This document shows positions 8,429-59,551 of a DNA stretch of 64,000 nt, piece by piece. Below the pieces are notes generated by a model. The model had not been told where the DNA came from. It searched no databases and worked only from the letters and a program-made list of their open reading frames with translations. Source of the stretch: Podarcis cretensis (taxonomy: Eukaryota); assembly GCA_951804945.1 (NCBI GenBank), contig OX638166.1, forward strand, positions 38,440,001 to 38,504,000. The letters run 5' to 3'. Each line of letters opens with the position of its first letter. Position 1 is the first letter of the stretch. The translations under genes were made by a program, and so were the position numbers.

Positions 8429-10483
8429 AACTAATGTCCATCTTTTACATTCTTAAATTGCTTTGCAGACATTAGCAATCAGTAATCATGACACCAACCC
8501 TGTAAGGTTGGTCAGCATATGGGAGGCTGAGACCACATAGCAAGTTTGTGGCCGAAGTGAGATTTGAACATGGAACTTCCTGGCCTCACGCTAACAGCCA
8601 CTATGTGACACCAGCTGACATGGGACAAGCTCACATACCCACTTTTCCCACTGCTGCTGCTTAATTCTATTCTCACCGCTCGGTTTTTCTCACACACATC
8701 TGCCTACAGAGACCTTTTTGATTGTCATTTCCACCAGCCCCCTAACCCTGTAAGGATCATGCAAAATGCTGTGCAACGTCTAGGCAGGGCAACTCAGGGA
8801 CTTCTCTTGGTCAATTTCAGATTTGAATTCCAGTTGCCAGAACCAAAGACTACAAGAAGCACTGCATCATACCGTGCTGTAAGGGGATTCACCAATTCTT
8901 GTTCTTCCTGAGCGTGTCTGCGTTACCTACTATGGGGGGGGGGGCTGGCGGGGGCTACCCTATATTGCCTTACATCACTTCATCTAAAGTACTTCTGCCA
9001 TTTGCCCACTGTTAGGTATGGGGAGCAAACAATCACCCTTCACAGGGCGAAATGATTCAAATATATTTTGATCTGGATTAGCAGTATAATGCTTCAGACT
9101 AGAGCACTTCTGTGTGAGCATGAGGGTGTGGGTTCTAATCTTGTTGAATGTCATTTTCTTGTATAAAGCATAGTATGCACCTTGCTCTTATACCAGAAGC
9201 CTACAGAAGCAACTGCACATCCAACTGTGTCCTAGATACTAACTTTAGGTGTTGGTCCAGTCCACATTTTTCTAGGAAATTTTCGTTTTCCTAGCAAAAG
9301 CAATCTGTATAGAGTTCATACAGCCATAGAAAACTCAACCCATGACACTTTGCTAATTTCAATCCTACAATTGTCCAGGCTTGGCTTAAATAGGTGACGC
9401 AAACACTCTTGCTATTATTTCTTATTGCACAGATGGTTACACTGCGAAGATCTGCCCAGAATTAGTCATGTTATTCTTTCAGCCAAAGAAAAATCTAATG
9501 CCAAAAACCTTGGGTTCAAGAATATTAATGAATCAATTAAAGAGAGATTACCAAAATTTAAGTACTTAAAAATAGAATAAAGAAGGAGAAGGGACAGAAT
9601 GTAACAGGCTTGAAAAATGGATGGGTAGTGTGAAAAGACACAGTACAGATTTGGTTAATAAGCTGCCAGTCACTTGTGTTAAGGAAGAATTGTAGCCTGT
9701 GGTAACTTTGTAAAAACTGTGCCTGTGGTAAGGAAGAATCACTTCCAGTTGACCAAGCAGTGGAGGTTTTATAACTAGGTAGAAAACTGATTGTTTCAGG
9801 CTGCCAATATGTCATAAATCAGGGGTGAGGAAAACAGTGGCTCTCCAGATGTCACTGGCTGGTGCTAATGGGAGATGAAAGCCATTAATATCTAGAAGGC
9901 CACATGTTCTCCACCCCTGCCCAGTGAAAACAGATGCACTTGGATGGACAACATAGTAGACGTTTTCCAGAGTTAGAAACCTCTGCAAATTTTATTTTAT
10001 TTTTTTGCAAGGCCAGGCTATATGTCAAGAAGGATGCTCCACTGCTTGATGTTTGGCTCTCAGGTGAACTACAACTGACATATTGACTTTGTCAGGAACA
10101 TAATAGTCTAGGCATTAGAATTAAAAACGCATAGGGCAAAATAAAAGGAAGGCAATAAGAAATATCAGTGGCAGACAAGGTGAGGGCAACACCTTTGCAA
10201 AATTAGTAGGCAGAGGGCCTTAGCTGTAAAGAAAGGTGCTGGAGCTGCTCGACAGGGAAGGCAACAGGTGCTGAGTGACAAGGAATTCTGAGATAGAATG
10301 AAACCTGGAAAACCATGATGGGCAACAGATGAACGGAATATAACAAAAATGCCCACTAAAATGGGAGTCAGGAAACAATTGAGCGTGAAGACGTGCAAGA
10401 ACCAACAGAGATGGTCAACGTTTCCGAAGCAGAACTCTACGAAATGCAATGGGATGCGTTTGGGGTGGTGGTGTGGGCCTTAC

Positions 10484-11095
10484 CTTGACCCGGAATCGGA
10501 TCATGGCCAAGCGGACGCAGTGCCCCAAGCAGGCCGGGGGAAGGAACCAGGCCCGGGGTGGCGGGGTCCCCTTGTTGCCCACATGCCCCGCGATGAGCTG
10601 GGCTGTCTGTCTCTCCGCCTGCGCCTTCCTGCCCCACTCAGGCAGCCTCTCCTTGCCGAGCCCTCCGTTGAAGATGACAGCCAGCTCCAGCCCGCCTTGG
10701 TAGAGGCAGGCCTGCGAGAGGGCAGCCAGGTAGCCCACCATAGCATTCCACTGGCCCCCGCACACCCAGTCCGTCTGGTAGCCGCCGTAGAGGCGCTGCA
10801 AGGCCGAATCTGCGTCCACCAGGAGCCGAGCGGGGCACGGGGGGGCGGCGGCGGCGGGGCCGGGCAAGCCGGGCTGCGGGTGACCGTAGGGGCCAGCACC
10901 CACCACGGCTCCCAGGCCCGGCGCGGGCCCGGCGGGGGGCGGGTAGCCGGCGGGGGGCGGGTGGAAGGCGGCGCAGTAGGCAGGGCCCCCGCCGCCCCGG
11001 CCCCCGACGGCCCGCGCCAGCTTCAACAGGTCCACGGGCACCACAGCCCCCGGGCAGCGCTTCTCCACGAACTCCTGGAAGCCCTGCACCCCCAT
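10484..11095 (-). CDS. FAM120C: FAM120C coding exon 1 (612 nt, 204 codons)
   Basis: Kozak gccATGG; MGVQGFQEFVEKRCPGAVVPVDLLKLA...RLYGGYQTDWVCGGQWNAM...GNKGTPPPRAWFLPPACLGHCVRLAMIRFRVK; donor AAG|gtaagg. C-paralog residues and adjacency to WNK3 favour FAM120C over FAM120A. Confidence 0.95.
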
Positions 11096-11187
11096 GGCCG
11101 CGCGCCCCACTTCCGCGACGGGGCGGGCACCCCCGGAACCAGGACCTGGCACAGGCAGAGCTGCTCCAGCTCCTGGCGCTTGGCTCC

Positions 11188-11226
11188 TCACAGCGCCCGG
11201 TTCGTGGGAATGGACGCGGCCGCCAT
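11188..11226 (-). other. Candidate upstream ORF MAAASIPTNRAL* in the FAM120C 5' leader
   Basis: aacATGG strong Kozak context, 13 codons ending TGA 92 nt before the main ATG; requires a TSS upstream of 11226. Confidence 0.5.
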
Positions 11227-12039
11227 GTTGTAGCTTTCTTCTCCTTCTCCTCCTCCTCCTCCGCTCCTCCTCCTTCCCCCGCAGCTGAAGCCGGAGCCCG
11301 TCGGGAAGTGTAGTCCCGTTTCTGCTGGTCTCTCATTAAGTCAGAAGGACCATGCGAGGCCACACGACTACAACTCCCGGCAGGGCGGGAAAGGCGCCAT
11401 CTTGTTATGATTTCTTCGCGCTTTCCAGGGGCCGCATAGCTTCATGGGACTTGTAGTCTCAGGGAAAGTTGTTCTCCGGGCCGCCAAAAAGCTGGAGTCG
11501 GCCGACTTGGGACTACAACTCCCGGTGGCCTGAGGGGTCCGCCATGTTTTTGTACGGACTGATCTCCCCCTTGTGAGTTTGCGCGGCCTCACGGGAGGGG
11601 CGGAAGTCGGAGGCTCATTGCGAACATAGACTTGCAAAGCGCCACAACCTGCAGCCGGCCTCGCGCCGCCTCATACGAAGGCCTTCGTACGTTTTTATTT
11701 CGCTGCTCGGTTTCACCGGCTCATGGGCAATGTAGTTCCCCCACCTGGAAGGAAACAACATCGCCTCAGGGTTGGGCTCCAGTAACGGGCGAAAGGCCGC
11801 CCGGAAGGGGAGCGGGTGCCTGGTTGGGCCTTCGTTGGGCGCCATATTGTCACGTTTCTGTGTCCCGCTTGGCATGCTGGGAGACGTAGTCCGGATCGCC
11901 AGGTCGAGGAAGGGCCTCAGAGGAGCCGAGGCCGCCGGGAGTCGCGCGGTGTTTGCTGGGAAGGACGCCGCGGACAGAATCAGTCGGGACTGGTTGCCAG
12001 GCAGACTGGCCCCGCCATGAGGGAAGGCGAGGTAACTGC

Positions 12040-35945: not shown

Positions 35946-36790
35946 ATGCGTACAGAGATCACCGGGAGCAGAGGTGATAGCACTGGGCTCCCTCATCAGC
36001 ACTCGCAAACTGTCTGGATGACTTGCAGATGGGATCAGCATAGCCTGGGGGGCTGAAAGCTTGGAGGGGCTTTGCTGGGTCTCTTGGGGGGAGTCTGGTG
36101 CATCAAGAACTGGGCCAGGAAGAGTTTCTTCAGCAGACGAGGAAAATGGAGACTCCACGGCACTTTGTGTGTCTTTCTGGCTCTCAGGGGAAGTGCCCGA
36201 CAAGCTGTGTTCCTGATACAGAAGCGTCCGCAGCTTCTCATCCAGAGTTTTGATGTTGTTGTCGACAAAGTCCATCTTAGGGGGGCCCTCACTGTCTGAC
36301 TCCAGAGTGGATGCGAAGGGGGCGCCTTCTTGTCCTGGGGTCTGAGCCAAAGCACTGGCCTGTTCTGTGCTCATGGCGTTATCTGCTTCCTCAGTGGTTG
36401 GGATGTGGCAGGTGGCTGGTCTGGGCACAAAGGCCTCCGTGGGCATACTTTGCTCCGCAGTGCCAGATGTTGGATGGGGTGTATATGAAGATAAGTGAGT
36501 TTCGTCAGCCTGGGTCTCTGCCTCTAAAGACTCTGGCCAAGCAGAAGAATCGGAAGCAGTAACATCATAATTGTCACCAGCAGTGGCAGACAGCAGCTTA
36601 TCCATGCTGCCTTCCACTTGGTGAGGAATTGCTGACTGCTCAGTTTCCGATGTTTGGGGTTCAGATACCATACTGTCACTTAGCTCATTTGAGCTGGAAG
36701 AGGGGATCGTTCTGTGCTGGCTGCTGAGATTTTCCACAGCCTGTGGACAATCCTGGGGGTGATCTTCTTTGCTACTCTCCTTTATATGGT
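35946..36790 (-). CDS. WNK3: WNK3 exon (845 nt, phase 1 to 0)
   Basis: Contains [33 protein letters not shown]; acceptor gttttcag, donor CAT|gtgagt. Confidence 0.9.
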
Positions 36791-36866
36791 CTGAAAACAC
36801 AAAGAGATAAAACTGTTGACAAATAACACCCTAGGGAAAGCTATGTTGCAGTATGGCCCTTTAGAA

Positions 36867-45816: not shown

Positions 45817-47629
45817 CTAACATGGGAAGGAAAAAACAGGGTAGAAGATGTAAATGCATCTTCTATCACATTTTATACAATCAGAGAAATCTTAGCTTTC
45901 CAAATGAATAATATTGTTTGGCTGAAGGAAAACTCATATATAGCCAAAACAATTGAAATTGTGCCAGTGTCTATGTAGCAAGAAGCCATCTCAAGTTTCC
46001 CCAGTAATAAGGAAGAAACATACTTATTCTAAAATGGTATCGCTATACTTAAGTATTCCTTTTTCTAAACATATTATTTTGCAAAATTCCAAAATCAGGG
46101 GCCAGAACTAATTATAATCCAGAAGCCAACCACAGGAAGAAAGTTTCCCTCAAAATCTGCTCACAGGTCCGGGCCTCACCCCTAGAAGCACCCAATGGCT
46201 CCCTGGGTGGGGTTTAGCCTCAGTGCATCCAATGGAATCCATTACCTGAGGGATGCCTGCCATCTGCAAAAAGGATAAAGTCTACTCTCACTCCACACCC
46301 CTGCATAGTACTAGAAATCACGACTGTACGTAAGCAGGGGGATCCAAGTCTTCAACAAACACCCCATTCTTACATGGGGTCTCCATCCAAGGAATGATCA
46401 AATCCACACCTACATAGTTCCAGGTGTGCTCCTGCATCAGGTGTCAAACCAGCTTGAAACTACAAGCCCCTGCACCACATCCTCATAGGAGATCAATGTC
46501 CTCCATTCAGTATTTTCTGTAGTATTAATCTAAGGTTTTAATCCTATCATACGTACCTGGAAATGAGTCCCATTAAATCAGGGATGTGGAGTCTGTGACC
46601 CTTCATATGCTGTTGGTTTACAGCTCCCAGTATTCTTGATCACTGGCCATGCTGCCTTGAACTGATGAGATATGGAAGCCACAACTCCATTAGACCCATC
46701 TTGCATGGCCAGTGATAAAGGATCAGCCTTGATGGGATTTGTAATCCACAACACCTTGAGTGGGGCTATACAAACCCCCTACCCCAGTTAAAAGATGTCT
46801 AGGATCAGGCAGCAAATTTTATGTCTAAAGAAGAAATGTGTACTATTGTCAAAGTTTTTGGCCGCTTATTTTTTAAAAAAATTAAATTTTACTGAACAAC
46901 AAAAGCAAACAATACACACGAGAGAAAAACAAACATTAACAACAAAATAATATAAGTTTAATACAAGGAGCTTTTGATGATAGTCAAAGAAAAATTAAAA
47001 ATTCAGAAGTGAATGAAATGGATAAAATTATAAACGAGATATAAAAACACAACTTGTGCAATGAAGGAAATAGGAAAAGGGGAGGAGTGTCTATAAGGAG
47101 GCAAGACCGTCTTCCATTGAATTAAATGAATTTATCCAACCTGCACTCCCCCCCCCCCCACCGATTTTCTAATGTTTAGGGCTAAAACACCATTTTGAAT
47201 CTTATTAACCCAAGGAACAACAGATGGTCCTGCAGGAGTCTGCAGCAAACCTGAAATAATAACTTAGAAGGTTAGTTCAAATGGTTTAAGGATTTTTAAA
47301 ACGTTTGTCTTGAAGTCCTTACATGCGACGTTTCCAAAGGTGACAGTGCCTGGGAGGCTGAGTTTAGTCAAACCTCCAAGCCCAGTTTTCATTGATTCCT
47401 CTAGCAGCCCCATTTTTAGGATCTTGCCCCAAGGCCTCTCAAAGTTAGTTCTCAAAATAATCTGTGCAAGTCAAGGGCATGTCAAGTGGAAGACTAAGGT
47501 TAGACCTCAGGGGTTTCCATATCTTGAGAAATGCTATGAACAAGACACAAGGCTATTGCACATTGTCCCGAGCAACCCAAGCATTTGAACAAAAAATCTC
47601 TAGCGGAAAGCAGGCTCTATGAAACTTGC

Positions 47630-47746
47630 CATGTAGTCAGCAATGTCTTCCGGAGCATCTCCATCAACATCAAATTTAAATGTGACCATCTTGTTGTTAT
47701 GAGTCTCAAGCTGGCACTCCACCGTGTTGTCCCCCGATGTTGACAC
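47630..47746 (-). CDS. WNK3: WNK3 exon (117 nt, phase 0 to 0), second CCT-like domain, GC donor
   Basis: [39 protein letters not shown]; acceptor ttcaatcag, donor ATG|gcaagt. Confidence 0.9.
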
Positions 47747-49094
47747 CTGATTGAAGGGGGGGGATTGAGTAATTAGATAGAGTCAGAACCTGCCTCTTCT
47801 TCTCCAATTCTTAGCAAACAAAGATGACCTCTACCTGACTGGTGTGACACCAATCCTGTAAAATGACAGCACTTGTCCAAAGGCTGAAGTGGCAAAGCAC
47901 CAATAACTAAAAAGGTTTAACACTACATATTATCTTTCGTGTTGTTTTAAATAGATAATTATGTACATATTATATGTTGTCCTATAGCATGATAATGAAT
48001 AGAGAAACGATTCATTTCTGTAGAATCTGGCATCTGTTGAAAATGCCAGCACTTGGTCTTTGGGATTCAGTGACCTCAGTTTCAAATATTCCATCAAAAG
48101 ACTTTATAAGCATTTTCTGGAGGCTTGAAAATATACTTCTTCACCCAAAGACTATATTCAAATTTTTCCCTCCAGTTATGACCTGATTCCAAATACTTGC
48201 CTTCAATAACATTTGGAATGGATTCTAGATCCTGTTCACACATTGTGTTGTTTTAAAAGCAACTGATCTGAACCCATTCCTTTCTGATCTTGTGAAGCTG
48301 CAAGAATAAACTTAAGCTAAAAAGATACACAAAAAACTGTGAAGTCATCTGCTATCTCTGACAGCGGACACACAAACCAGAGTAGAAACATTAATTGTGT
48401 ACAACATTGGATAAATCAATTGTTTTAATCAGTCCATTTTGCAAGTCTCAAAATTCATCCCACAATTTACCATCCACAAAGACTGATTCTAGGCAAATCT
48501 GAGATTATAGAAGTTATAAAAGTGCTCTTCTGCTCAAAGTTGGTGTTAAAAGAACAACTTGCTATTCTGTTTCCCCATATTGAGGTGCCCCCTGAAATAT
48601 GATCTGTGAATATAAGAATTGACTGAGCCAAAGGGCTTCTTCTTAACATATATTAACCAGAAAAACAAATGATTATCTGGAGTCCAAGGGCAGGATTCAA
48701 CTAAGTTGTTGCATGTCCAGAATGAGGAGTCTCCGTACAATGGAAGTTTCCATCCTCTCCTACCCCTGTGCACCCTCCTGCACCATTTAAATCTGCTCTG
48801 GGGGGTTGGGGGGAAACCCAGAAAAGGTTTGGGGTCATTCAGGGTAAGGAGAGGGTGGAAAAGTCTCATTGCATTAGTGGATCTCATTCTCTGGACACAT
48901 ACTCCAATTGAATTCCACACATAGTTGCAGAATTTATAGTCATTAAAGCATTGCTTGCAAATGGGAATTTGTACAACGGTGGTAGTAGAGCCCAGATAAA
49001 CAACCTCAGATATATTTTCCAGACAGATGTTATTCAATTGAATTCTATTCTGGAGCTATGCATGGTTTAGCCTAGATTGTTAAAACATACATAC

Positions 49095-49242
49095 CTGTAG
49101 CACAGTGAGCTGAAATTTGGTTCCCTTCTCTGTTCGGGCACATGAAGCTCTCCGTTGCTTGCTTTTGTCTTGTTTGCCATTTCCACTTGGAAGGTCACAT
49201 CCATTGGCACCTTCCTTCTGAATGGCTACATCAGGGATCGGT
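49095..49242 (-). CDS. WNK3: WNK3 exon (148 nt, phase 2 to 0)
   Basis: [32 protein letters not shown]; acceptor tcttttaag, donor CAG|gtatgt. Confidence 0.92.
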
Positions 49243-50699
49243 CTTAAAAGATAGGAAAAGAGGTGAGCACTCTTAGAAGGAGCACACCGAGACACTTCTG
49301 AGGGGAAGCTCTCTGTAACTTCTGAACATTAATTTAAGTAAATTTTTGTTTTCCTTTTATCAACTAGCCCAAATGAGGGCTTGCATTACCTCACAGCAGC
49401 AAACCTACTCAATATTTGAATAGGGAAATAGATCAAAATAGGGCTGGCAAACACTACTTTTTAAGTGAGTTGAAGGTGGCTAGGTACCATATGCAGACAT
49501 TGCTGTCTATGGTATATGCATTTAGTTTGTCACATTACCATTGATGGTTAAACACTTAAATTCACATGGGTGAAATTCACATGGGTGCCTTGGACAAACC
49601 ACATTTCTCCCAGTCTCAACTACACAGAGAGAGACAGACACACCGCATCTGTAATGGGGAGAATATTAGCTTAGCTTACAGGGCTGTTGATGGTCCTCCT
49701 ATTGTATACATTACCCTATCTGTGGGGCAGCGGGATTTCCCTGACTTCTTTCTAGGCCACTGTGGTCATGTTCAACATCCCAGTGCCACATAGATGGGAC
49801 CAACAATGCCCACCCTTCCATCCGCTGTCTTCTAGGCAATGATCAGGTGAGAAAGGCCCAGATTACTGAACTCAAGGTTACTACAACAAAATGGAAGTAG
49901 CGAAGCCATGGAGAACTGGCTCCCAAACAACTTCGTAGTTGTGTACGAAGTGTCTTCTAAAGTACTGCAAACACTCAGGAAAAGCACTTCACAAACATTT
50001 TCTTACTATTGTTCTCTTTACCTTGTCTTAGTGTTGCTTGGGGTGGTATGCAGAGAAAGTTAATGGATAGATGGCACCTTTGCAGATGTACAGAAGGGGG
50101 GTTGTGGGGAGGACCAGGACTAGTCCTTACCTTAGGGTAATAAGGCACAGGGCTGGACCCTGCAGCAAGTGGGTGGTAACATGACTGGGGAGGAGGGAGA
50201 GATGGATGTAGCAACTGCTTTTCAACTGGTGACCTTAGTCTGTGAGGTGGGGCTAGGGAAGGTGCCATTTAGTTCACATCTCATTTGGCAAAAGGTTTGG
50301 CGCTGGCATTGAGGACTGGCAAATTCTGGGAATCGCAAACCTAAAGTCTTCCAGTGAAATCCATAAGTTAACTTTCTAGCACACTACTGCTTTGATCAGA
50401 AAATTCCTAACAGTTATCCTAAGTATTTACTTCCCTAAATTTAACTGAAGTTCTTAGCAGGGAGAGAATGATGAGAGCTCCTATCTTTGTGTACAATATG
50501 CTTCAATAATGTTTCTTCCTACCACAACTCTGCCAGCTTTCTTCTGGTTGAAGTGAACTCCCCCCTTCCCACCCCTCTGCAAGCCTTGAGCTTGTCTTCT
50601 CTGTATAGAAAATGGAGATGTTCACTAGTTTTGATCTCCATGCACTTAGCATTCCTGCCTTCCACCAGGCCAAAAAAATTAACCTTGGAGCAGACTCAC

Positions 50700-50758
50700 C
50701 CTTGAACAAAATCCTGCTTTTGAACTGACGGCTGTTGTTCTGGTACCAAGATGGAAGC
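50700..50758 (-). CDS. WNK3: WNK3 exon (59 nt, phase 0 to 2)
   Basis: ASILVPEQQPSVQKQDFVQ(G); acceptor tatttctag, donor GG|gtgagt; supplies the required phase change. Confidence 0.82.
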
Positions 50759-53131
50759 CTAGAAATAGGGAGGGAGAAAATTAATTATGTTGGTTCTGCA
50801 TTTGCCATCCACACTTGGATGCAGCGATACTAAGCAAATTAAGTAATTACACAAAATGCAAACAATTTGTGTGCTTGAAATGAAACACAATCATACTTTT
50901 CCAGGCTGACATCCTCAGGACCCGGATCTGCTCCCCCCCCCCCCTTCTTCTTCTAGTAGCATTCAGCACCAGTTCTAAAGATAACCTTGAATAATATCTA
51001 GCTCTGGAGATTCTATTCCAAGCTTTGCATTTGCTTTGAAAATATTTCCCATCCATGGTTAGGAAAATATTTGCAGTCTCAGAAATGTATGCTTGCTATT
51101 TGCAATCCCAGGAGAAAAAGTGAAAATAAAAGTTATTAGAGTGGAAAGCTGAGGCAAGTTACTCTACAGTTAAAGACATACAATCTCTAAAGATCATTAG
51201 AATGAACACCTCTTGCATGAACAGCAGAAAGGATAAAACATTCTAAGGAGGTTAAACCTAGTTTATCCACAACATTTTCCCTTTTTATGGAATAGACACA
51301 GCATTGTGCTAGATCACTAGATTACAATCTGTAATCCAGTACACAGTTTGAAGGTGTCACAAATAGCTACAAATGACATTGGTGGCATGATTAGATATGC
51401 AGGAGAATGGAGAAACCTTTATCCACAGACACAACTGCAACAAGGAAAGTGCTGAGAACACAAAATAGGCAACAGGGGATGCTCAGATAGTTTCTCCTCA
51501 GAAATGAGAAATCAGGTTGTCTAGAACTGAAACTGTGTGCTAACCCTAAGAGCTATCTTGTCACGGTAGGCAAGATGAGCAAGAAGAGGTCTCAGGAGAT
51601 GATGAAGCTAAGGAACAAGAGGCTCAGGTAGCCAAAAGAACGGGAAAGAGTCTGCAATGAACAGAGATAAAAGGTGCTTCCAGGTATGGATGATTTAGCA
51701 ATCCCTCATCATTTTGGTTCTGCTTTCAGCTGAAAGTTGAAGAGCAATTCAGCCTCCACACTTCTTGAAGGCAGACCCTAACACTTTGTTCTGCAGCCAG
51801 GTTCTGAGTCCTCTTTTCCCAACTCCAGTTACTGAGAGGGGGGTCATTAGGACCAGGGGGGAGGGAAGACTACCTCCTCCTTCACGGTACTCCTTATCAT
51901 GTCGCCCCATTGCTGCAACGTAAGAAGGAGTGGGAGAAAGAGTGCAACGCTTTTTGGAAAGAGAAAGGTCAAACTGATAGAACTAATTCCTAGAGAGGAG
52001 AAACAAACCAGAGAGAGAAAAAGTAGCTACAGCAATCTAGAATAACAGCACAGTAGCCCACCAATGCCCAGGGAATGTACTGTATGCAGCTACGAAAAGA
52101 GTTGAGAAAAAGTTGCATTTTCTAAGCTCATAAAAAAGGAAGTGGAACAGGGAAAAAGTGAGAGGAAAATGTTTTGTTCATGCCATCTTGCATGAGTAAG
52201 GAAGCAGTACATGTCCAGTGTGGAAGCAGTCACAGAAACCTAAAAGAACAGCAGATGGTAGAAGCAGAGGAAAAGAGACAGGGAATTAAGGATGAAAGTG
52301 ACCGACAAAAGGAGAGGACTATTGAAACAAGGCAGTCAAAGCTGTATTAAATGGGCAGGAAAGGGGTGGAGAAGAATGCTGGATGAACACTGCTGGTTGA
52401 AAGATAGTGTGGCTGGACAAAGCAGGGCCAGCTAAGATGAAGCAGGAAGAAAATCATAGAATCATAGAATTGGGACCATGAAGGTCATCTAGTCCAAACC
52501 CCTGCAATGCAGGAATCTTTTACCAAAAGTGGGGCACAACCTCGAGATTAAGAGTCTCATGCTCTGCTGACAGAGCTACAAGGCAACCATTAGGTTGGCA
52601 GAGGTGTGACCATAGACAAAGAAAGGAGGGACTAGGGTTGACCTCTTTTTCCTGACAGGGCTACTGGATTAGAACAATTTTTCCATTGTTTAAATCCAGT
52701 CTTGCACGTAGCACTCATGGAAGGCTATACCTGCCAGTTGTCAAAAATACCACTTGTGAAGCAGATTAGAAGCACACAAATCTGATTAGCAAGAAATTAA
52801 ACACAAAACAGGAAACATTTTTGGTTAACTCTGCACCCTCTAGAAAGAACAAAAGTTTCTGGCTGAGTCTTGTTTGCGCAGAAGAAAATGTCACCACCAT
52901 CCCATGCTAAACAAACCCAAGCTGTGGGGACTGTGTAGGGTAGAGAAAGCTTTTTCTGCCAGAGAGCTGCATTTCCTCCTGGGCTGCCTTCCAGGGCCTG
53001 TGTGCCAGAAGCGGGATGGGCAAAAGCAGGCAGAGCAACAGATGCAACTCTTGCCTTGGTACACAGGAGGCTACACTCTGGGTTTCAACCCACACCTCTC
53101 CACTCTTCATTCAGGAAGCATGGGGCACATC

Positions 53132-53670
53132 TGTCAGGGCTGGATTCAGGCATAGGGCAGCAACAAAACAATAAATCAATGGAAACAAACCACAAGTCTG
53201 GCCTGTCAGTCTCAGCAACTCTTTCAAGGTCTTGCCCCAATGAAGCAGTTGTGAGGGCTGAAGATGCCTGCCTTCCCAGGGTCCACTGGGACTCCTCCTC
53301 TCCAGGGTCTTTCCCACTCAGTCTCAGGCGGCATCTGCGCACAACCCGGCTCTGCCCTGCCCTCTTGATTTCTCTGTGTGTTCTAGGAGACCAGGAGAGG
53401 AGCTGGTTGCACCGGGAGGGGGAGACTCTCTGGCTTCTTCCGCAGCCAGCCCCTCTGCCTTCTGGCCCCATTCCTCCCCAGCCTCTGGACTGCTCTCTGC
53501 CACAGTCTCTCCCTTCTCACTAAACCCTGTCACCTCTTCTGCTTCACCCTCTTCTCTCTCTGGCCACCCACCACCAAGGCCCTGGCTCTGAGCCCTCTTC
53601 CCTTGCGGGGGGGGGGGTGTTCCTCGGCTGGTGCCTCCCACCATTCCTCTGCATCCAGCCAATCCATGAT
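53132..53670 (-). mobile_element. Probable solo LTR (~540 bp)
   Basis: Ends ...CCCTGACA on the minus strand, purine-rich body; the other terminus is degenerate and no TSD was seen. Confidence 0.42.
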
Positions 53671-53914
53671 CGTACCACAGCTCAAAGACGCTTTGCAGCC
53701 CCGCAAACACACTCAAGCAAGCCAGGCCAGTGTGGAGGTGCATGACCTGACGGCCAGATACAGAAGCATGGAACATCTCGTCCAGTTTGGCCCTAAAGTA
53801 TGCAATCACCATTAAAAAGTCAAAATACTTAGCCACTTTGTTGTGACTCTCTTTTCTGTTGAAGGGGGCGGGAATCCTAGGAAACAAGTTTTTTTAAAAA
53901 AACGAATGATATAC

Positions 53915-56900
53915 CTGTGAAATGTCTTGTCCTTGAACGTGTTCTTGGTGTGGCTGTGTCCCTGCGCTAAGTGATGCTTGCTGGTTCAGGGCTGCTGCTG
54001 CTGCTCCAGAACTCGTTGAAGGGAACTGCTTCTGGACCACTGGCTCTGCAGGCAACATGGACCCCTGGCACATTGGCAGCTGCTGCTGCTGCTGCACATA
54101 TGCTGACTGTACTGAGGAAGCTGTAAATGGTTGGTTATTATCAGCTGGCTGAAATGCTGGAGGTTGCTGGAGGAGGCTAGGACCGTGCAGGTGCCCGGGA
54201 AGTTCTGGCGGCTGTTGCCTTGCATGAGCTGGCTCTGACTGTTCTGGCATGGAAGACACAGTCTGTGGTGCGTTTGGGGCAGACTGTGGGACTGTGGCGT
54301 TGAGGGGCTGAGGAATAGCATGCTGGTTGAACTCTTGATAGGGAGCCTGTGGCTGCATTTGTGGGATAAAAGATGGCTGAGATGGGACAAAAGGGGCCTG
54401 CGATCCTGGCTGTTGGCCTTCTGCAAACTTGTGTCCCGCCTGAGGAGGCTGCAGCTGCTGGTGCCCTATGCCGGAATCCTGCTGGATCAGATATGTTGAT
54501 GGCTCAGGCTGGAGCTGCTCGGAGGGATAAGCATGGGCCTCCACTGGTTGCCCTAGGCAAACCTGCTGCTCCATGCAGCCAGCGCCACTATCCTGCACCG
54601 TATATAACGATTTCTCAGGAGAGCGCATGGCAAAACTCCGTTGATCTGCAACCTGTACTGCTAAGTGAGCCTGCTGGATCTCTGGAGGCGGAATTAGATA
54701 TGGCGCTGGTTGGGTTACGAAAGCTGCCTGTCCTTGGTAAAAAGACGGCATTGGATATGTCGGTTGGTCCAAGGGCTGTCCTGGATACACTCCAGGGACT
54801 GCATAGACCAGTTGCTCTGTGCACGGAGGCTGATCGGAGCCTTGCATTGTGTAAGTGACACGCATCTGACATGGTGCTTGCTCTGGTGCCTGGAGCTGGT
54901 TGGTGGGCTGCACTTGAGGTGCCAGCTGCTCTGAAGCTGGGAGCTGGTGGGGGGGCTGCGTTTGATATATTAGCTGTTCTGGGGCTTGCAGGTGGTACTG
55001 GATGGGATAAGCCACCTGCTCTGGAGTTGAACCCGAGAGCTCGGCCTGCTGCGGCTTTTCTACAACTTGTTGAGTGACAGCTGCCAACTGCTCCGTAGAG
55101 CTGCCCTGGAAAAGAAACTGCTCTTGTTTCTGCTGCTGTAGAGGCAGGTGGTATAACATCTGTTGCCTTACACAAGGATGTTGATCTGTGGATTGGTGCA
55201 TCTGAATAGCTTGCTGCTCTTGCTGCACCAGGGAAGGCTGCGCCGAAGCATCAAGGGGCAGCGTGGGATACTGTGGGCACTGTGGAAGTTGAATCGGCTG
55301 CGGCATGGCAGAGACCTGATGTACTGGCACAACCTGCTGGGACTGCTGAATGGAACCAACCTGCTGGGGAATTTGTGGAGATTGCTGAATGGAGCCCACT
55401 TGTGGGGGAATATGCTGAGACTGCTGCATTACTGCTGCCTGTTGAAGCTGTTGAATAGAGGCCATTTGCTGGGGCTGCTGCATGGATGGAACTTGCTGGG
55501 GCTGCTGCATGGGTGCCACCTGCTGGGGAACTTGCTGGGGCTGTTGCATAGCCACCAACTGCTGAGGAACGTGCTGGGACTGCATGGATGTTGCTTGCTG
55601 AGGAACATGCTGGGGCTGCTGCATGGACATCGCCTGCTGGGGAACTTGCTGGGTCTGCTGCATGGGTGCCACTTGCTGGGGCTGCTGCATGGACATCGAC
55701 TGCTGCGGAACTTGCTGGGTCTGCTGCATGGGTGCCACTTGCTGGGGCTGCTGCATGGACATCGCCTGCTGCGGAACTTGCTGGGGCTGCTGCATGGGTG
55801 CCACCTGCTGGGAAACTTGCTGGGGCTGCTGCATGGATACCACCTGCTGGGGAACTTGCTGCATTGTCACCTGCTGGGGAACTTGCTGGGGCTGCTGCAT
55901 GGGTGCCACCTGCTGGGGAACTTGTTGGGGCTGCTGCATGGGTGCCACCTGCTGGGGAACTTGCTGGGTCTGCTGCATGGATGCCACCTGCTGGGGAACT
56001 TGCTGGGGCTGCTGCATGGGTGCCACCTGTTGGGTCTGCTGCATGGATGCCACCTGCTGGGGAACTTGCTGGGTCTGCTGCATGGATGCCACCTGCTGGG
56101 GAACTTGCTGGGTCTGCTGCATGGATGCCACCTGCTGGGGAACTTGCTGGGGCTGCTGCATGGGTGCCACCTGTTGGGTCTGTTGCATGGGTGCCACCTG
56201 CTGGGGAACTTGCTGGGGCTGCTGCATGGATGCCACCTGCTGGGGAACTTGCTGGGGCTGCTGCATGGGTGCCACCTGTTGGGTCTGCTGCATGGATGCC
56301 ACCTGCTGGGGAACTTGCTGGGTCTGCTGCATGGATGTCACCTGCTGGGGAACTTGCTGGGGCTGCTGCATGGGTGCCACCTGTTGGGTCTGCTGCATGG
56401 GTGCCACCTGCTGGGGAACTTGCTGGGGCTGCTGCATGGGTGCCACCTGCTGGGGAACTTGCTGGGGCTGCTGCATGGGTGCCACCTGCTGGGGAACCTG
56501 CTGCGTTGACACCATGTGTTGAGGAGCCTGCTGTGTAGGTGCCACCTGCTGAACAATTTGCTGGGGCTGCTGCATGGGTGCCACCTGCTGGGGTACTTGC
56601 TGGGGCATCTGTTGAACTGACACCTGCTGGGGAACTTGCTGGGGTTGTTGAATGGATGTAACTCCCTGTGGAACTGACGGCAGAGCTGAAGGGTTAGGAA
56701 GAGCCTGTGCTAAACTTGGCATATTGTTGACAAACTGAACTGAAGGCTGCCCCTGTAGCACAGGTGAATGACCAGCAGGCACAAAGCTGGCAGAAGCATG
56801 CTCCAGTTCCATTGATCCTGCAGCAGCTGGAGCCTGACTACCGATTCTAGCAGCAGAGGTCAACGGTATGTTAGCTGGCAGGTGTTGGTTCACCATCTGT

Positions 56901-57013
56901 GGTGCAGGGATAGTCTGAGGGGAAGTGGCTGTCAAGATCTGCTGGGGGACTCCCATGATGGATCCATCCAATGTCTGCCCTTCTGCACTGTAGGATACCT
57001 GTCCATCTGGAGC
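53915..57013 (-). CDS. WNK3: WNK3 giant Gln/Pro-rich exon (3099 nt, phase 0 to 0)
   Basis: Uninterrupted 1033-codon frame, including ~1.7 kb of non-repetitive sequence; acceptor tcttctcaccag, donor CAG|gtatat; in phase with both neighbours. Confidence 0.85.
55330..56660 (-). repeat. Coding minisatellite of 39-nt and 27-nt units (QQVPQQVAPMQQP / QQVAPMQQP)
   Basis: About 35 tandem units visible in both DNA and translation; homogeneous core, degenerate edges. Confidence 0.95.
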
Positions 57014-59398: not shown

Positions 59399-59551
59399 CA
59401 GCCTCGGTGTGAACTGCTGAAGTGCAACAGGAGACGCCTGGGCTTGAGGAACCACAGGGGGGGCCAAGCTGTGGGTGGGTAGGGTTGAAGGCTGACTCTG
59501 GATTAGTGGTAAAGCGCTGGGGTGGGCCACATTTGCTGGCTGTTGTTGCAC
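59399..59551 (-). CDS. WNK3: WNK3 exon (153 nt, phase 0 to 0)
   Basis: VQQQPANVAHPSALPLIQSQPSTLPTH...FTPRL; acceptor ttttgttag, donor CTG|gtaagg. Confidence 0.85.

What the first reader, a model, noticed from the sequence alone, without database searches (positions are those of the whole stretch)
53915..57013. Giant skippable WNK3 exon encoding a ~1000-aa Gln/Pro/Met prion-like module
Seen: a 3099-nt exon, phase 0 at both ends, so it can be skipped without a frameshift. It encodes a repeat array with no acidic, Lys/Arg or aromatic residues and about one Met per unit, followed by a Tyr-studded Q/P region (PEQVAYP, PEQLIYQ, TEQLVYA). The WNK3 coding sequence in this window alone is 2263 aa. Recalled: human WNK3 is ~1800 aa and the orthologues of the flanking 153-nt and 59-nt exons join directly. 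Established: WNK kinases sense molecular crowding by phase separation through their disordered C-terminus; WNK1 has a tissue-specific giant cassette (HSN2); Met oxidation tunes the Pbp1/ataxin-2 low-complexity domain. Inference: a splice-switchable, length-tunable and possibly redox-sensitive condensate module that sets the osmotic or thermal threshold of WNK3 in an ectotherm.
Basis: partly seen in the sequence, partly recalled or inferred. Interest (0 to 1): 0.82.

Follow-up and report, generated by a model that had tools for sequence, protein, structure and literature searches.

The report
Ancient disordered Gln-rich WNK3 exon
The 3.1-kb exon is a real, transcribed part of a wall-lizard WNK3 kinase gene, but it is an old reptile-and-platypus exon already in public gene models, and nothing yet shows that it is switched in and out.

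Summary
Observation confirmed. Window 57013..53915 (minus strand) is a 3099-nt open exon with AG/GT borders and phase 0 at both ends. It has a 119-aa head, a 441-aa array of 13- and 9-aa units (Q 44%, P 15%, V 13%, M 8.4%; no D/E/K/R/F/Y/W), and a 473-aa Q/P/Tyr tail.

Spliced RNA contigs from two studies join its donor to the downstream 59-nt exon, so it is expressed. AlphaFold2 predicts complete disorder.

It is not new as an exon. The window is a Podarcis (wall lizard). RefSeq WNK3 models of many squamates, turtles, alligator and platypus carry an orthologous exon at the same position (353 to about 1136 aa). Placental WNK3 proteins join the two flanking exons directly.

The Met-punctuated repeat is shared by turtles, alligator and many lizards. 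In snakes, monitors, skinks and geckos the Met is mostly Ile, Val or Thr, which weakens the redox idea.

None of the public isoforms I retrieved skips the whole exon. The annotated cassette is the upstream 153-nt exon. The models do show in-frame deletions inside the array, which could be real internal splicing or repeat artefacts. The condensate role is plausible but inferred.

The parts
53915..57013 (-). Giant WNK3 coding exon, 3099 nt, 1033 codons, phase 0/0
   Evidence: Open frame. AG acceptor and GT donor. Aligns to residues 674-1725 of Podarcis muralis WNK3 X1. Spliced to the downstream exon in RNA contigs of runs X1 and X5.
56657..57013 (-). Non-repeat head, 119 aa; the best-conserved part of the exon
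   Evidence: Identity 58-78% to other squamate families, 42-46% to turtles, 40% to platypus. pLDDT below 50.
55334..56656 (-). Tandem array, 441 aa, about 35 units of 13 or 9 aa, one Met (or Ile) per unit, uncharged and non-aromatic
   Evidence: Gln codons are 152 CAG and 43 CAA. Mean nucleotide identity among the 13-aa units is 87%. Unit number and order differ from P. muralis (36 or 25 units in two annotations) and P. raffonei (27 units).
53915..55333 (-). Non-repeat Q/P-rich tail with Tyr/Phe, 473 aa
   Evidence: Identity 98% to P. muralis, 92% to Zootoca, 52-69% to other squamates, 25-29% to turtles, alligator and platypus over 86-95% of its length. Covered end to end, as far as the stretch laid, by the spliced X1 contig.
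59399..59551 (-). Upstream 153-nt exon (51 aa, phase 0/0); this is the cassette in public isoforms
   Evidence: Borders. Residues 623-673 are absent from P. muralis isoforms X3-X6 and X8-X11 (new annotation) and X20-X21 (old annotation), and from the Anolis, Sceloporus and Candoia models.
50700..50758 (-). Downstream 59-nt exon
   Evidence: Borders. Joint 53915>50758 in X1 and X5 contigs; joint 50700>49242 in the X1 contig.
49095..49242 (-). Next 148-nt exon ([15 protein letters not shown]...KFQLTVLQ)
   Evidence: Borders. In the same spliced X1 contig. Its loose end beyond 49093 reads, by my translation, into [10 protein letters not shown], the start of the CCTL2 exon.
47630..47749 (-). Start of the WNK CCTL2 domain exon, which fixes the giant exon's place between the autoinhibitory/CCTL1 region and CCTL2
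   Evidence: Pfam PF24889 CCTL2_WNK, E = 4.8e-15; tblastn mapping.

Best explanation
This is a normal coding exon of the wall-lizard WNK3 gene, and as far as the data go it is always included. It descends from an exon already present in the amniote ancestor. Squamates, turtles, crocodilians and the platypus kept it; placental mammals lack it (marsupials not checked).

It encodes about 1000 residues of intrinsically disordered, almost uncharged Gln/Pro-rich chain. This chain sits between the autoinhibitory/CCTL1 region and the CCTL2 domain, in the proximal part of the long C-terminal domain. In WNK1 and fly WNK that domain drives crowding-induced condensation.

The middle of the exon is a tandem array of 13- and 9-aa units, each carrying one hydrophobic residue (Met here) among Gln and Pro. 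The array changes copy number quickly, most likely by unequal recombination or replication slippage.

Shown: exon structure, transcription and splicing, orthology, phyletic spread, composition, predicted disorder, copy-number differences between assemblies and species.

Inferred: the module adds multivalent weak self-association (hydrophobic 'stickers' in a Gln/Pro 'spacer') to WNK3's crowding-sensing C-terminal domain.
For: - Exon anatomy.
- Transcription and splicing: the X1 contig (2080 nt) carries the tail of the exon spliced 53915>50758 and 50700>49242, with CT..AC (that is, GT..AG) intron ends. An independent study (X5) shows the 53915>50758 joint.
- Gene identity: CCTL2_WNK hit. Identity is 98-100% to P. 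muralis WNK3 exon by exon. All 120 best full-length relatives carry the WNK kinase/OSR1_C Pfam domains, and every one that a source names as a gene is called WNK3.
- Orthologous insert between the same two flanking exons: squamates 570-1136 aa, turtles 544-647 aa, Alligator 809 aa, platypus X4 353 aa, placentals 0-2 aa.
- Specificity: a profile search of 1.84 billion representatives returned only WNK3 proteins or bare ORFs of this exon. A word search with the turtle exon returned 61 hits, all turtle or squamate WNK3.
- Rate: the head and tail evolve at about the same rate as another disordered WNK3 exon at 35946-36794. This speaks for ordinary coding constraint.
- Disorder: AF2 with an 18-sequence alignment gives mean pLDDT 38.8 and essentially no secondary structure. 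The array has zero charged and zero aromatic residues.
- Background: WNK C-terminal-domain condensates, and the Q-rich C-terminal domain of fly WNK.
Against: - No experiment or computation here shows self-association or condensation of this segment.
- Placental WNK3 works without it.
- Length varies three-fold among lineages and the 'Met' position is not fixed. Much of the array may therefore be tolerated rather than needed.
- Constitutive inclusion is not proven. Contigs hide rare isoforms. The two raw-read RNA runs laid had no WNK3 cover. The stretch laid could not contain both 59399 and 50758.
- The RNA contigs come from 'organism A', whereas the best DNA holders are 'organism D'. The RNA differs from the window by about 1% and may be from a sister species.
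Confidence: 0.8

Rival explanations
1. One reading: the exon is a regulated cassette, included or skipped by tissue or condition like WNK1's HSN2, switching a condensate module on and off.
For: - Phase 0/0, so skipping keeps the frame.
- Placental WNK3 is functional with the two flanking exons joined.
- A partial Gekko japonicus RefSeq model joins the flanks with no giant exon.
- The neighbouring region is alternatively spliced: the 153-nt exon is a cassette.
Against: - None of the 27 P. muralis RefSeq isoforms retrieved, the 5 Alligator mississippiensis isoforms, the A. sinensis model, or the RefSeq turtle models examined lacks the whole exon.
- The short reptile and platypus models are Ensembl/UniProt entries plus one older Zootoca RefSeq model. 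They are not clean skips: they carry intron-derived residues, or a fragment of the array, in place of the giant exon (the Ensembl ones lack the 59-nt exon too). That pattern is typical of homology projection.
- The only contig covering the 59-nt exon in run X1 comes from the giant exon.
- The Gekko model is partial, sits on a 531-kb scaffold, and another gecko (Eublepharis) has the exon.
Confidence: 0.12
2. Length tuning by splicing inside the exon. The repeat unit carries both a donor-like CAG|GTG and an acceptor-like CCCCAG|CA, so in-frame 'exitrons' of whole units are removed, giving WNK3 proteins with arrays of different lengths from one allele.
For: - P. muralis RefSeq isoforms differ by in-frame deletions of 22-166 aa, all inside the array.
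- Caretta isoforms X8/X9 lack 272 aa inside the exon.
- The window's array has 24 CAG|GTG sites and 39 CCCCAG|CA sites.
Against: - Any deletion of whole repeat units can be written as a GT..AG gap in this array. Allelic length differences, reverse-transcriptase template switching or PCR slippage would therefore be called introns by a spliced aligner.
- Array length does differ between the two P. muralis annotations (459 vs 312 aa) and between species.
- The donor CAG|GTGGCA is weak by the usual consensus (my judgement).
- I had no reads across the array.
Confidence: 0.25
3. The array is a methionine-based redox sensor like the Pbp1/ataxin-2 low-complexity domain: oxidation of the roughly 37 Met residues melts WNK3 assemblies.
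For: - 8.4% Met with one Met per unit and no aromatic residues in the array, the same unusual pattern as described for Pbp1.
- Met holds this position in turtles, alligator, lacertids, Elgaria and iguanians, so it is probably ancestral.
Against: - In Candoia, Naja, Varanus, Hemicordylus, Lerista and Eublepharis the same position is mostly Ile, Val or Thr. Selection seems to want a hydrophobic or beta-branched residue, not an oxidisable sulphur.
- Nothing here tests oxidation.
Confidence: 0.1
4. The segment is a largely neutral, expandable disordered spacer with no function of its own. It is kept only because losing a 3-kb in-frame exon is rare.
For: - Lost without obvious harm in placentals.
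- Three-fold length range and fast unit turnover.
- No Pfam domain, no RFx[VI] SPAK/OSR1 motif, no predicted structure.
Against: - The frame has stayed open over 1-3 kb in every lineage examined, spanning the squamate, turtle, crocodilian and monotreme lines.
- Head and tail are as conserved as another WNK3 disordered exon.
- The same unit motif (PQQV..[ST]MQ) persists in turtles, alligator and lizards.
- Charged residues are completely excluded from 441 residues.
Confidence: 0.25

Closest known systems
The same exon in public reptile, turtle, alligator and platypus WNK3 gene models (e.g. Podarcis muralis isoform X1, 2777 aa; Alligator mississippiensis X1, 2257 aa; Mauremys reevesii X2, 2264 aa; Ornithorhynchus X4, 2173 aa)
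   Same: Same position between the orthologues of the 153-nt and 59-nt exons. Alignable head and tail. The same Q/P/V/Met unit in the sauropsids.
   Different: Unit number and order differ: 441 aa of array here, 459 or 312 in two P. muralis annotations, 362 in P. raffonei. The platypus has only one or two units. These are automatic annotations; I found no paper describing the exon.
WNK1 HSN2 / 8b / 9 / 11 / 12 alternative exons (PMC3365125)
   Same: Large or optional exons encoding disordered sequence in the WNK paralogue. From my own knowledge, they lie in the same general part of the protein, after the autoinhibitory region and before CCTL2.
   Different: HSN2 is a documented tissue-specific cassette; skipping of the WNK3 exon is not documented. 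No sequence similarity was detected: the profile search hit only WNK3.
Disordered, prion-like C-terminal domain of WNK1 and the Gln-rich C-terminal domain of Drosophila WNK (Boyd-Shiwarski et al., bioRxiv 10.1101/2022.01.10.475707)
   Same: Long, disordered, low-complexity segment in the proximal C-terminal domain of a WNK kinase. Gln-rich like the invertebrate WNKs.
   Different: That paper describes vertebrate WNK C-terminal domains as Pro/Ser-biased after a 'Q-to-P/S switch', using WNK1. Sauropsid WNK3 keeps a segment with 44% Gln. Here Gln comes as QQ pairs separated by Pro/Val/Met, not as poly-Q tracts (longest run 5). Condensation of this segment is untested.
Methionine-rich low-complexity domain of yeast Pbp1 / ataxin-2 (reviewed in PMC8394241)
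   Same: Non-aromatic low-complexity sequence with unusually many Met residues.
   Different: No homology. The Met position is replaceable by Ile/Val/Thr in several squamate families. Redox behaviour is untested.

Membership tests
WNK3 orthologue | WNK-specific CCTL2 domain downstream of the exon | tested here: met
   PF24889 CCTL2_WNK, E = 4.8e-15, at window 47600-47746.
WNK3 orthologue | Closest full-length relatives are WNK3, not WNK1/2/4 | tested here: met
   All 120 best hits carry WNK Pfam domains and every one that a source names as a gene is WNK3. Window exons are 94-100% identical to P. muralis WNK3 X1 residues 462-2777, and 86-92% in four short or variable pieces.
WNK3 orthologue | Kinase domain with the displaced catalytic lysine | not testable with these tools
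   The kinase exons lie upstream of the window (the window starts at about residue 462). The near-identical P. muralis protein has PF00069.
WNK3 orthologue | Neighbourhood with FAM120C, as recalled for mammals | tested here: inconclusive
   An ORF at 10415-11191 (minus strand) starts MGVQGFQEFVEKRCPGAVVP..., which I recognise from memory as a FAM120-type N-terminus. No family search was run.
Alternative cassette exon (HSN2-like) | Length divisible by three, same phase at both ends | tested here: met
   3099 nt, phase 0/0.
Alternative cassette exon (HSN2-like) | Transcripts both with and without the exon in one species | tested here: inconclusive
   Inclusion is shown. No whole-exon skip in the retrieved RefSeq isoforms of P. 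muralis or alligator, nor in the turtle models examined.
Alternative cassette exon (HSN2-like) | Tissue- or condition-specific inclusion | not testable with these tools
   Run identities and tissues are coded. The two raw-read RNA runs had no WNK3 cover.
Low-complexity / prion-like condensate domain | Strong compositional bias, few charges | tested here: met
   Array: Q 44%, P 15%, fraction of charged residues 0. Whole exon: fraction of charged residues 0.046.
Low-complexity / prion-like condensate domain | Predicted intrinsic disorder | tested here: met
   AF2 mean pLDDT 38.8; 1020 of 1033 residues below 50; no helices or strands of reportable length.
Low-complexity / prion-like condensate domain | Formal prion-like score (PLAAC/PAPA) | not tested
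   No such tool was on hand, and I did not trust parameters recalled from memory.
Low-complexity / prion-like condensate domain | Phase separation in vitro or in cells | not testable with these tools
   Needs an experiment.
Met-rich redox-sensitive LC domain (Pbp1-like) | Met enrichment without aromatics | tested here: met
   37 Met in 441 aa and no F/Y/W in the array.
Met-rich redox-sensitive LC domain (Pbp1-like) | Met conserved as the functional residue | tested here: not met
   Counts at the unit position: Met 30 of 37 here, 23 of 26 in Mauremys, 12 of 22 in Alligator. Against that, Ile 15 vs Met 8 in Naja, Ile 11 vs Met 5 in Candoia, Val 6 vs Met 2 in Varanus, Thr 9 vs Met 8 in Hemicordylus.
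Polyglutamine tract | Long uninterrupted Gln run | tested here: not met
   The longest Gln run in the exon is 5.

The most novel reading that the evidence does not exclude
The sauropsid WNK3 array is a functional sticker-and-spacer module: one hydrophobic (ancestrally Met) sticker per 9-13 residues of Gln/Pro spacer. Its copy number would set the crowding threshold at which WNK3 condenses. Copy number could vary by allele, or by in-frame internal splicing at the CAG|GTG ... CCCCAG| sites built into each unit. Losing the module in the therian line would then have re-tuned WNK3 osmosensing. It would also be a vertebrate exception to the proposed Q-to-P/S switch of WNK C-terminal domains.
Probability: 0.15. 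Interest if true: 0.7.

Novelty: new member of a known kind. Interest (0 to 1): 0.38.

Why it matters
WNK kinases are the cell's chloride, volume and crowding sensors. Their long disordered C-terminal domain is thought to do the crowding sensing by condensation. Almost all that work uses mammalian WNK1 and WNK3.

The data here suggest that placental WNK3 is a derived, shortened form. The amniote ancestor had an extra disordered module of 350-1100 aa, and sauropsids have filled it with a Gln-rich, Met-punctuated repeat.

This offers a natural series for testing how low-complexity length and sticker chemistry set a condensation threshold: array length from 1-2 units in platypus to about 36-40 in lacertids, and Met versus Ile/Val/Thr stickers.

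It also flags an annotation problem. Several Ensembl/UniProt reptile WNK3 models, and one for platypus, replace this exon with intron-derived residues.

It does not, on present evidence, reveal a new regulatory switch.

Tried and rejected
I therefore have no DNA for the orthologous exons, no dN/dS, and no check of splice sites in other species.

2. The first profile job failed because the alignment with full-length Varanus WNK3 gave more than 1200 profile positions. It was rerun with three exon-length sequences.

3. Raw-read RNA runs X22 and X23 gave no WNK3 cover, only a 35-nt intronic repeat. They say nothing about expression level or strand.

4. The skip junction 59399>50758 could not be tested. 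The two sites are 8.6 kb apart, the limit was 6000 bases, and only one read-laying run was allowed. I chose the donor side plus two downstream exons and avoided the array.

5. Short reptile WNK3 models of about 1600-1700 aa looked at first like skip isoforms. I rejected them as annotation artefacts after reading the junction residues.

6. Birds, amphibians, fishes and marsupials: no hit in the profile search or the two word searches. The alligator was itself missed by the word search, and the lists are capped, so absence there is not evidence.

7. Homology to WNK1/2/4 exons: none detected.

8. Human proteins appeared in the list. I did not analyse them and used seal, dog and whale sequences instead.

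9. The joined spliced coding sequence was not built or searched. Every search was exon by exon or used public protein ids.

10. PLAAC-type scoring was not run. Complex prediction, fold search and the protein atlas were judged irrelevant for a fully disordered segment.
Full report
**What is there.** On the minus strand, window 57013..53915 is one open stretch of 1033 codons. A polypyrimidine/AG acceptor precedes it and a GT donor follows it. The upstream exon 59551..59399 has 153 nt and 51 whole codons. The downstream exons 50758..50700 (59 nt) and 49242..49095 (148 nt) together make 69 codons.

The product has three parts:
- A 119-aa non-repeat head (57013..56657).
- A 441-aa tandem array (56656..55334).
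- A 473-aa Gln/Pro-rich tail with 16 Tyr and 12 Phe (55333..53915).

The array holds about 35 units, mostly of 13 aa (QPQQVPQQVAPMQ type) or 9 aa (QTQQVAPMQ type). Composition is Q 44%, P 15%, V 13%, M 8.4% (37 Met), with no acidic, basic or aromatic residue. TRF reports periods of 39 and 27 nt and higher-order periods of 105 and 144 nt. There is no poly-Q tract: the longest Gln run is 5, and Gln codons are mixed, 152 CAG to 43 CAA. The repeat is open in several frames on both strands, so its openness alone is not evidence. The evidence lies in the head, the tail, the splice sites and the RNA.

**It is transcribed and spliced.** Small contig sets from two different studies held 56-62% of the exon's sampled words. 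I laid window 49060-55059. One 2080-nt contig of run X1 carries the exon's tail joined 53915>50758, then 50700>49242, and runs on into the CCTL2 exon. Both skipped stretches end CT..AC on the plus strand, that is GT..AG for this gene. A contig of run X5, from another study, shows the same 53915>50758 joint.

These contigs differ from the window by about 1% and carry one extra GCT at 53990 (an Ala-run length difference). They bear the label 'organism A', while the best DNA holders are 'organism D'. The RNA may therefore come from a sister species or another population. Two raw-read RNA-seq runs showed no WNK3 cover at all.

**Which gene and which animal.** Window 47600-47746 matches the WNK CCTL2 domain. 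The window's exons map, in order, to residues 462-2777 of Podarcis muralis WNK3 isoform X1 at 94-100% identity, dropping to 86-92% in four short or variable pieces and to 85% across the giant exon because the arrays differ. The tail is 98% identical to P. muralis, 97% to P. raffonei and P. lilfordi, and 92% to Zootoca. The window is thus a Podarcis wall lizard, in line with what other agents of this scan wrote about this genome. All 120 best full-length relatives carry the WNK kinase/OSR1_C Pfam domains, and every one that a source names as a gene is called WNK3.

**The exon is old and already annotated.** I measured the number of residues between the orthologues of the 153-nt exon and the 59-nt exon in public proteins:

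| Lineage | Residues between the flanking exons |
|---|---|
| Squamates (lacertids, Elgaria, Varanus, cordylid, skink, amphisbaenian, iguanians, snakes, geckos) | 570-1136 |
| Turtles | 544-647 |
| Alligator mississippiensis | 809 |
| Platypus isoform X4 | 353 |
| Seal, dog, elephant seal, sperm whale | 0-2 |

- The head aligns at 42-46% identity to turtles and 40% to platypus. The tail aligns at 25-29% over most of its length.
- Turtles and alligator have the same kind of array (for example QQPQQVASMQQ and PQQVPQQVASMQ). The platypus has only one or two units.
- A profile of the exon searched against 1.84 billion representative proteins found only WNK3 proteins or bare ORFs of this exon (lizard, alligator, leatherback turtle). 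A word search with the turtle exon found 61 proteins, all turtle or squamate WNK3, some up to 3042 aa.
- Head and tail evolve at about the same rate as another disordered WNK3 exon at 35946-36794. Against Anolis the figures are 64% and 55% versus 67%; against Mauremys 42% and 29% versus 38%.

The simplest history is an exon present in the amniote ancestor, an array built up in the sauropsid line (or reduced in monotremes), and loss somewhere on the line to placentals. Birds, amphibians, fishes and marsupials did not appear in my capped lists, which proves nothing.

Two full-text searches found no paper describing the exon.

**Is it a cassette?** Frame symmetry only permits skipping. I compared 11 isoforms of the new P. 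muralis annotation with X1, and 15 isoforms of the old annotation with its longest form.
- The exon that comes and goes is the upstream 153-nt exon (residues 623-673). The Anolis, Sceloporus and Candoia models also lack it.
- No isoform lacks the giant exon. The five Alligator mississippiensis isoforms and the A. sinensis model all keep it.
- The short reptile and platypus models of about 1600-1800 aa (Ensembl/UniProt, plus an older Zootoca RefSeq model) are not skips. They carry intron-derived residues, or a small piece of the array, where the giant exon should be; an example is ...[12 protein letters not shown] just before the 148-nt exon. The Ensembl ones lack the 59-nt exon too.
- Only a partial Gekko japonicus model joins the flanks.

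I rate regulated whole-exon skipping as unlikely but not excluded.

**Length variation inside the array.** The same isoform sets show in-frame deletions of 22-166 aa inside the array. Loggerhead turtle isoforms X8/X9 lack 272 aa within the exon. Each unit contains CAG|GTG and CCCCAG|CA, 24 and 39 sites in this window. Removal of whole units can therefore always be drawn as a GT..AG intron.

That makes real internal splicing possible. It equally makes allelic length differences, template switching or PCR slippage look like introns. Arrays do differ between assemblies and species: 441 aa here, 459 and 312 aa in the two P. muralis annotations, 362 aa in P. raffonei, with different unit orders. 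I cannot separate these explanations.

**What it probably does.** AlphaFold2 with an 18-species alignment gives mean pLDDT 38.8 and essentially no secondary structure. There is no Pfam domain and no RFx[VI] motif. The array has no charge at all.

The segment lies in the proximal C-terminal domain. For WNK1 and fly WNK that domain drives crowding-induced condensation, and the fly protein is Gln-rich there. That paper proposes a Q-to-P/S switch early in vertebrate evolution, based on WNK1. Sauropsid WNK3 keeps a block of 44% Gln, a modest exception.

The most likely role is therefore extra multivalent weak self-association in WNK3's crowding-sensing tail. This step is inferred, not shown.

**The redox idea.** It rests on the Met residues. 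At the unit's Met position, Met dominates here (30 of 37), in turtles (23 of 26 in Mauremys) and in alligator (12 of 22). Ile, Val or Thr dominate in cobra, boa, monitor, cordylid, skink and gecko. The position seems to need a hydrophobic residue rather than an oxidisable one. This weakens the Pbp1 analogy without excluding it for lineages that keep Met.

**Verdict.**
- The gene assignment and the comparison with mammals are right.
- 'Skippable, switchable, redox- or temperature-tuned' is unsupported.
- The exon is not new to public annotation.
- What remains of interest is an apparently undescribed, amniote-old disordered module of WNK3, with a conserved Met-punctuated Gln/Pro repeat in sauropsids and rapid copy-number change, which placental mammals lack.

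**Limits of this work.** The joined coding sequence was deliberately not built. The human entries returned were not analysed.

Noticed in passing
window 59399-59551 (minus strand): The 153-nt exon just upstream is the real annotated cassette. Its 51 residues are missing from many P. muralis RefSeq isoforms and from the Anolis, Sceloporus and Candoia WNK3 models. Alligator isoform X2 also differs in this region, but I did not resolve how.
   Followed up: partly
window 52483-52518: A roughly 35-nt intronic piece is matched by very many RNA contigs and reads, with unlike sequence on both sides (word depth in the thousands; hundreds of raw reads in X22 and X23). It is probably a fragment of an abundant transcribed interspersed repeat.
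   Followed up: no
window 53990: RNA contigs of X1 and X5 carry an extra GCT here, which is one more Ala in the short Ala run of the tail. This matches the 474-aa versus 473-aa tail of the new P. muralis models.
   Followed up: partly
window 55163-56538 (plus strand): Long ORFs of 448, 316 and 299 aa on the opposite strand lie wholly inside the repeat array. They are open only because the repeat lacks stop codons in those frames and are not genes.
   Followed up: yes
window 10415-11191 (minus strand); GC 0.62 in 10001-12000: An ORF begins MGVQGFQEFVEKRCPGAVVP... inside a GC-rich island. It looks like the first exon of a FAM120-family gene, which would fit the WNK3-FAM120C neighbourhood. This is recognised from memory only.
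   Followed up: no
public proteins P0027, P0004, P0031, P0047, P0071, P0086 (Ensembl/UniProt WNK3 of Podarcis, Varanus, Naja, Sphenodon, Chelydra, platypus): These short models replace the giant exon and the 59-nt exon with residues read from intron sequence. They are likely homology-projection artefacts that understate reptile WNK3 length by 350-1100 aa.
   Followed up: partly
public proteins P0097/P0098 vs P0099/P0100 (Caretta caretta WNK3): Isoforms X8/X9 lack 272 aa inside the orthologous exon, running from the array into the tail. This suggests an annotated internal splice in a turtle.
   Followed up: no
window 54095: One X1 contig matches up to 54095 and then continues for 59 letters with unrelated sequence. 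It could be a chimeric contig or a rare alternative joint inside the tail.
   Followed up: no
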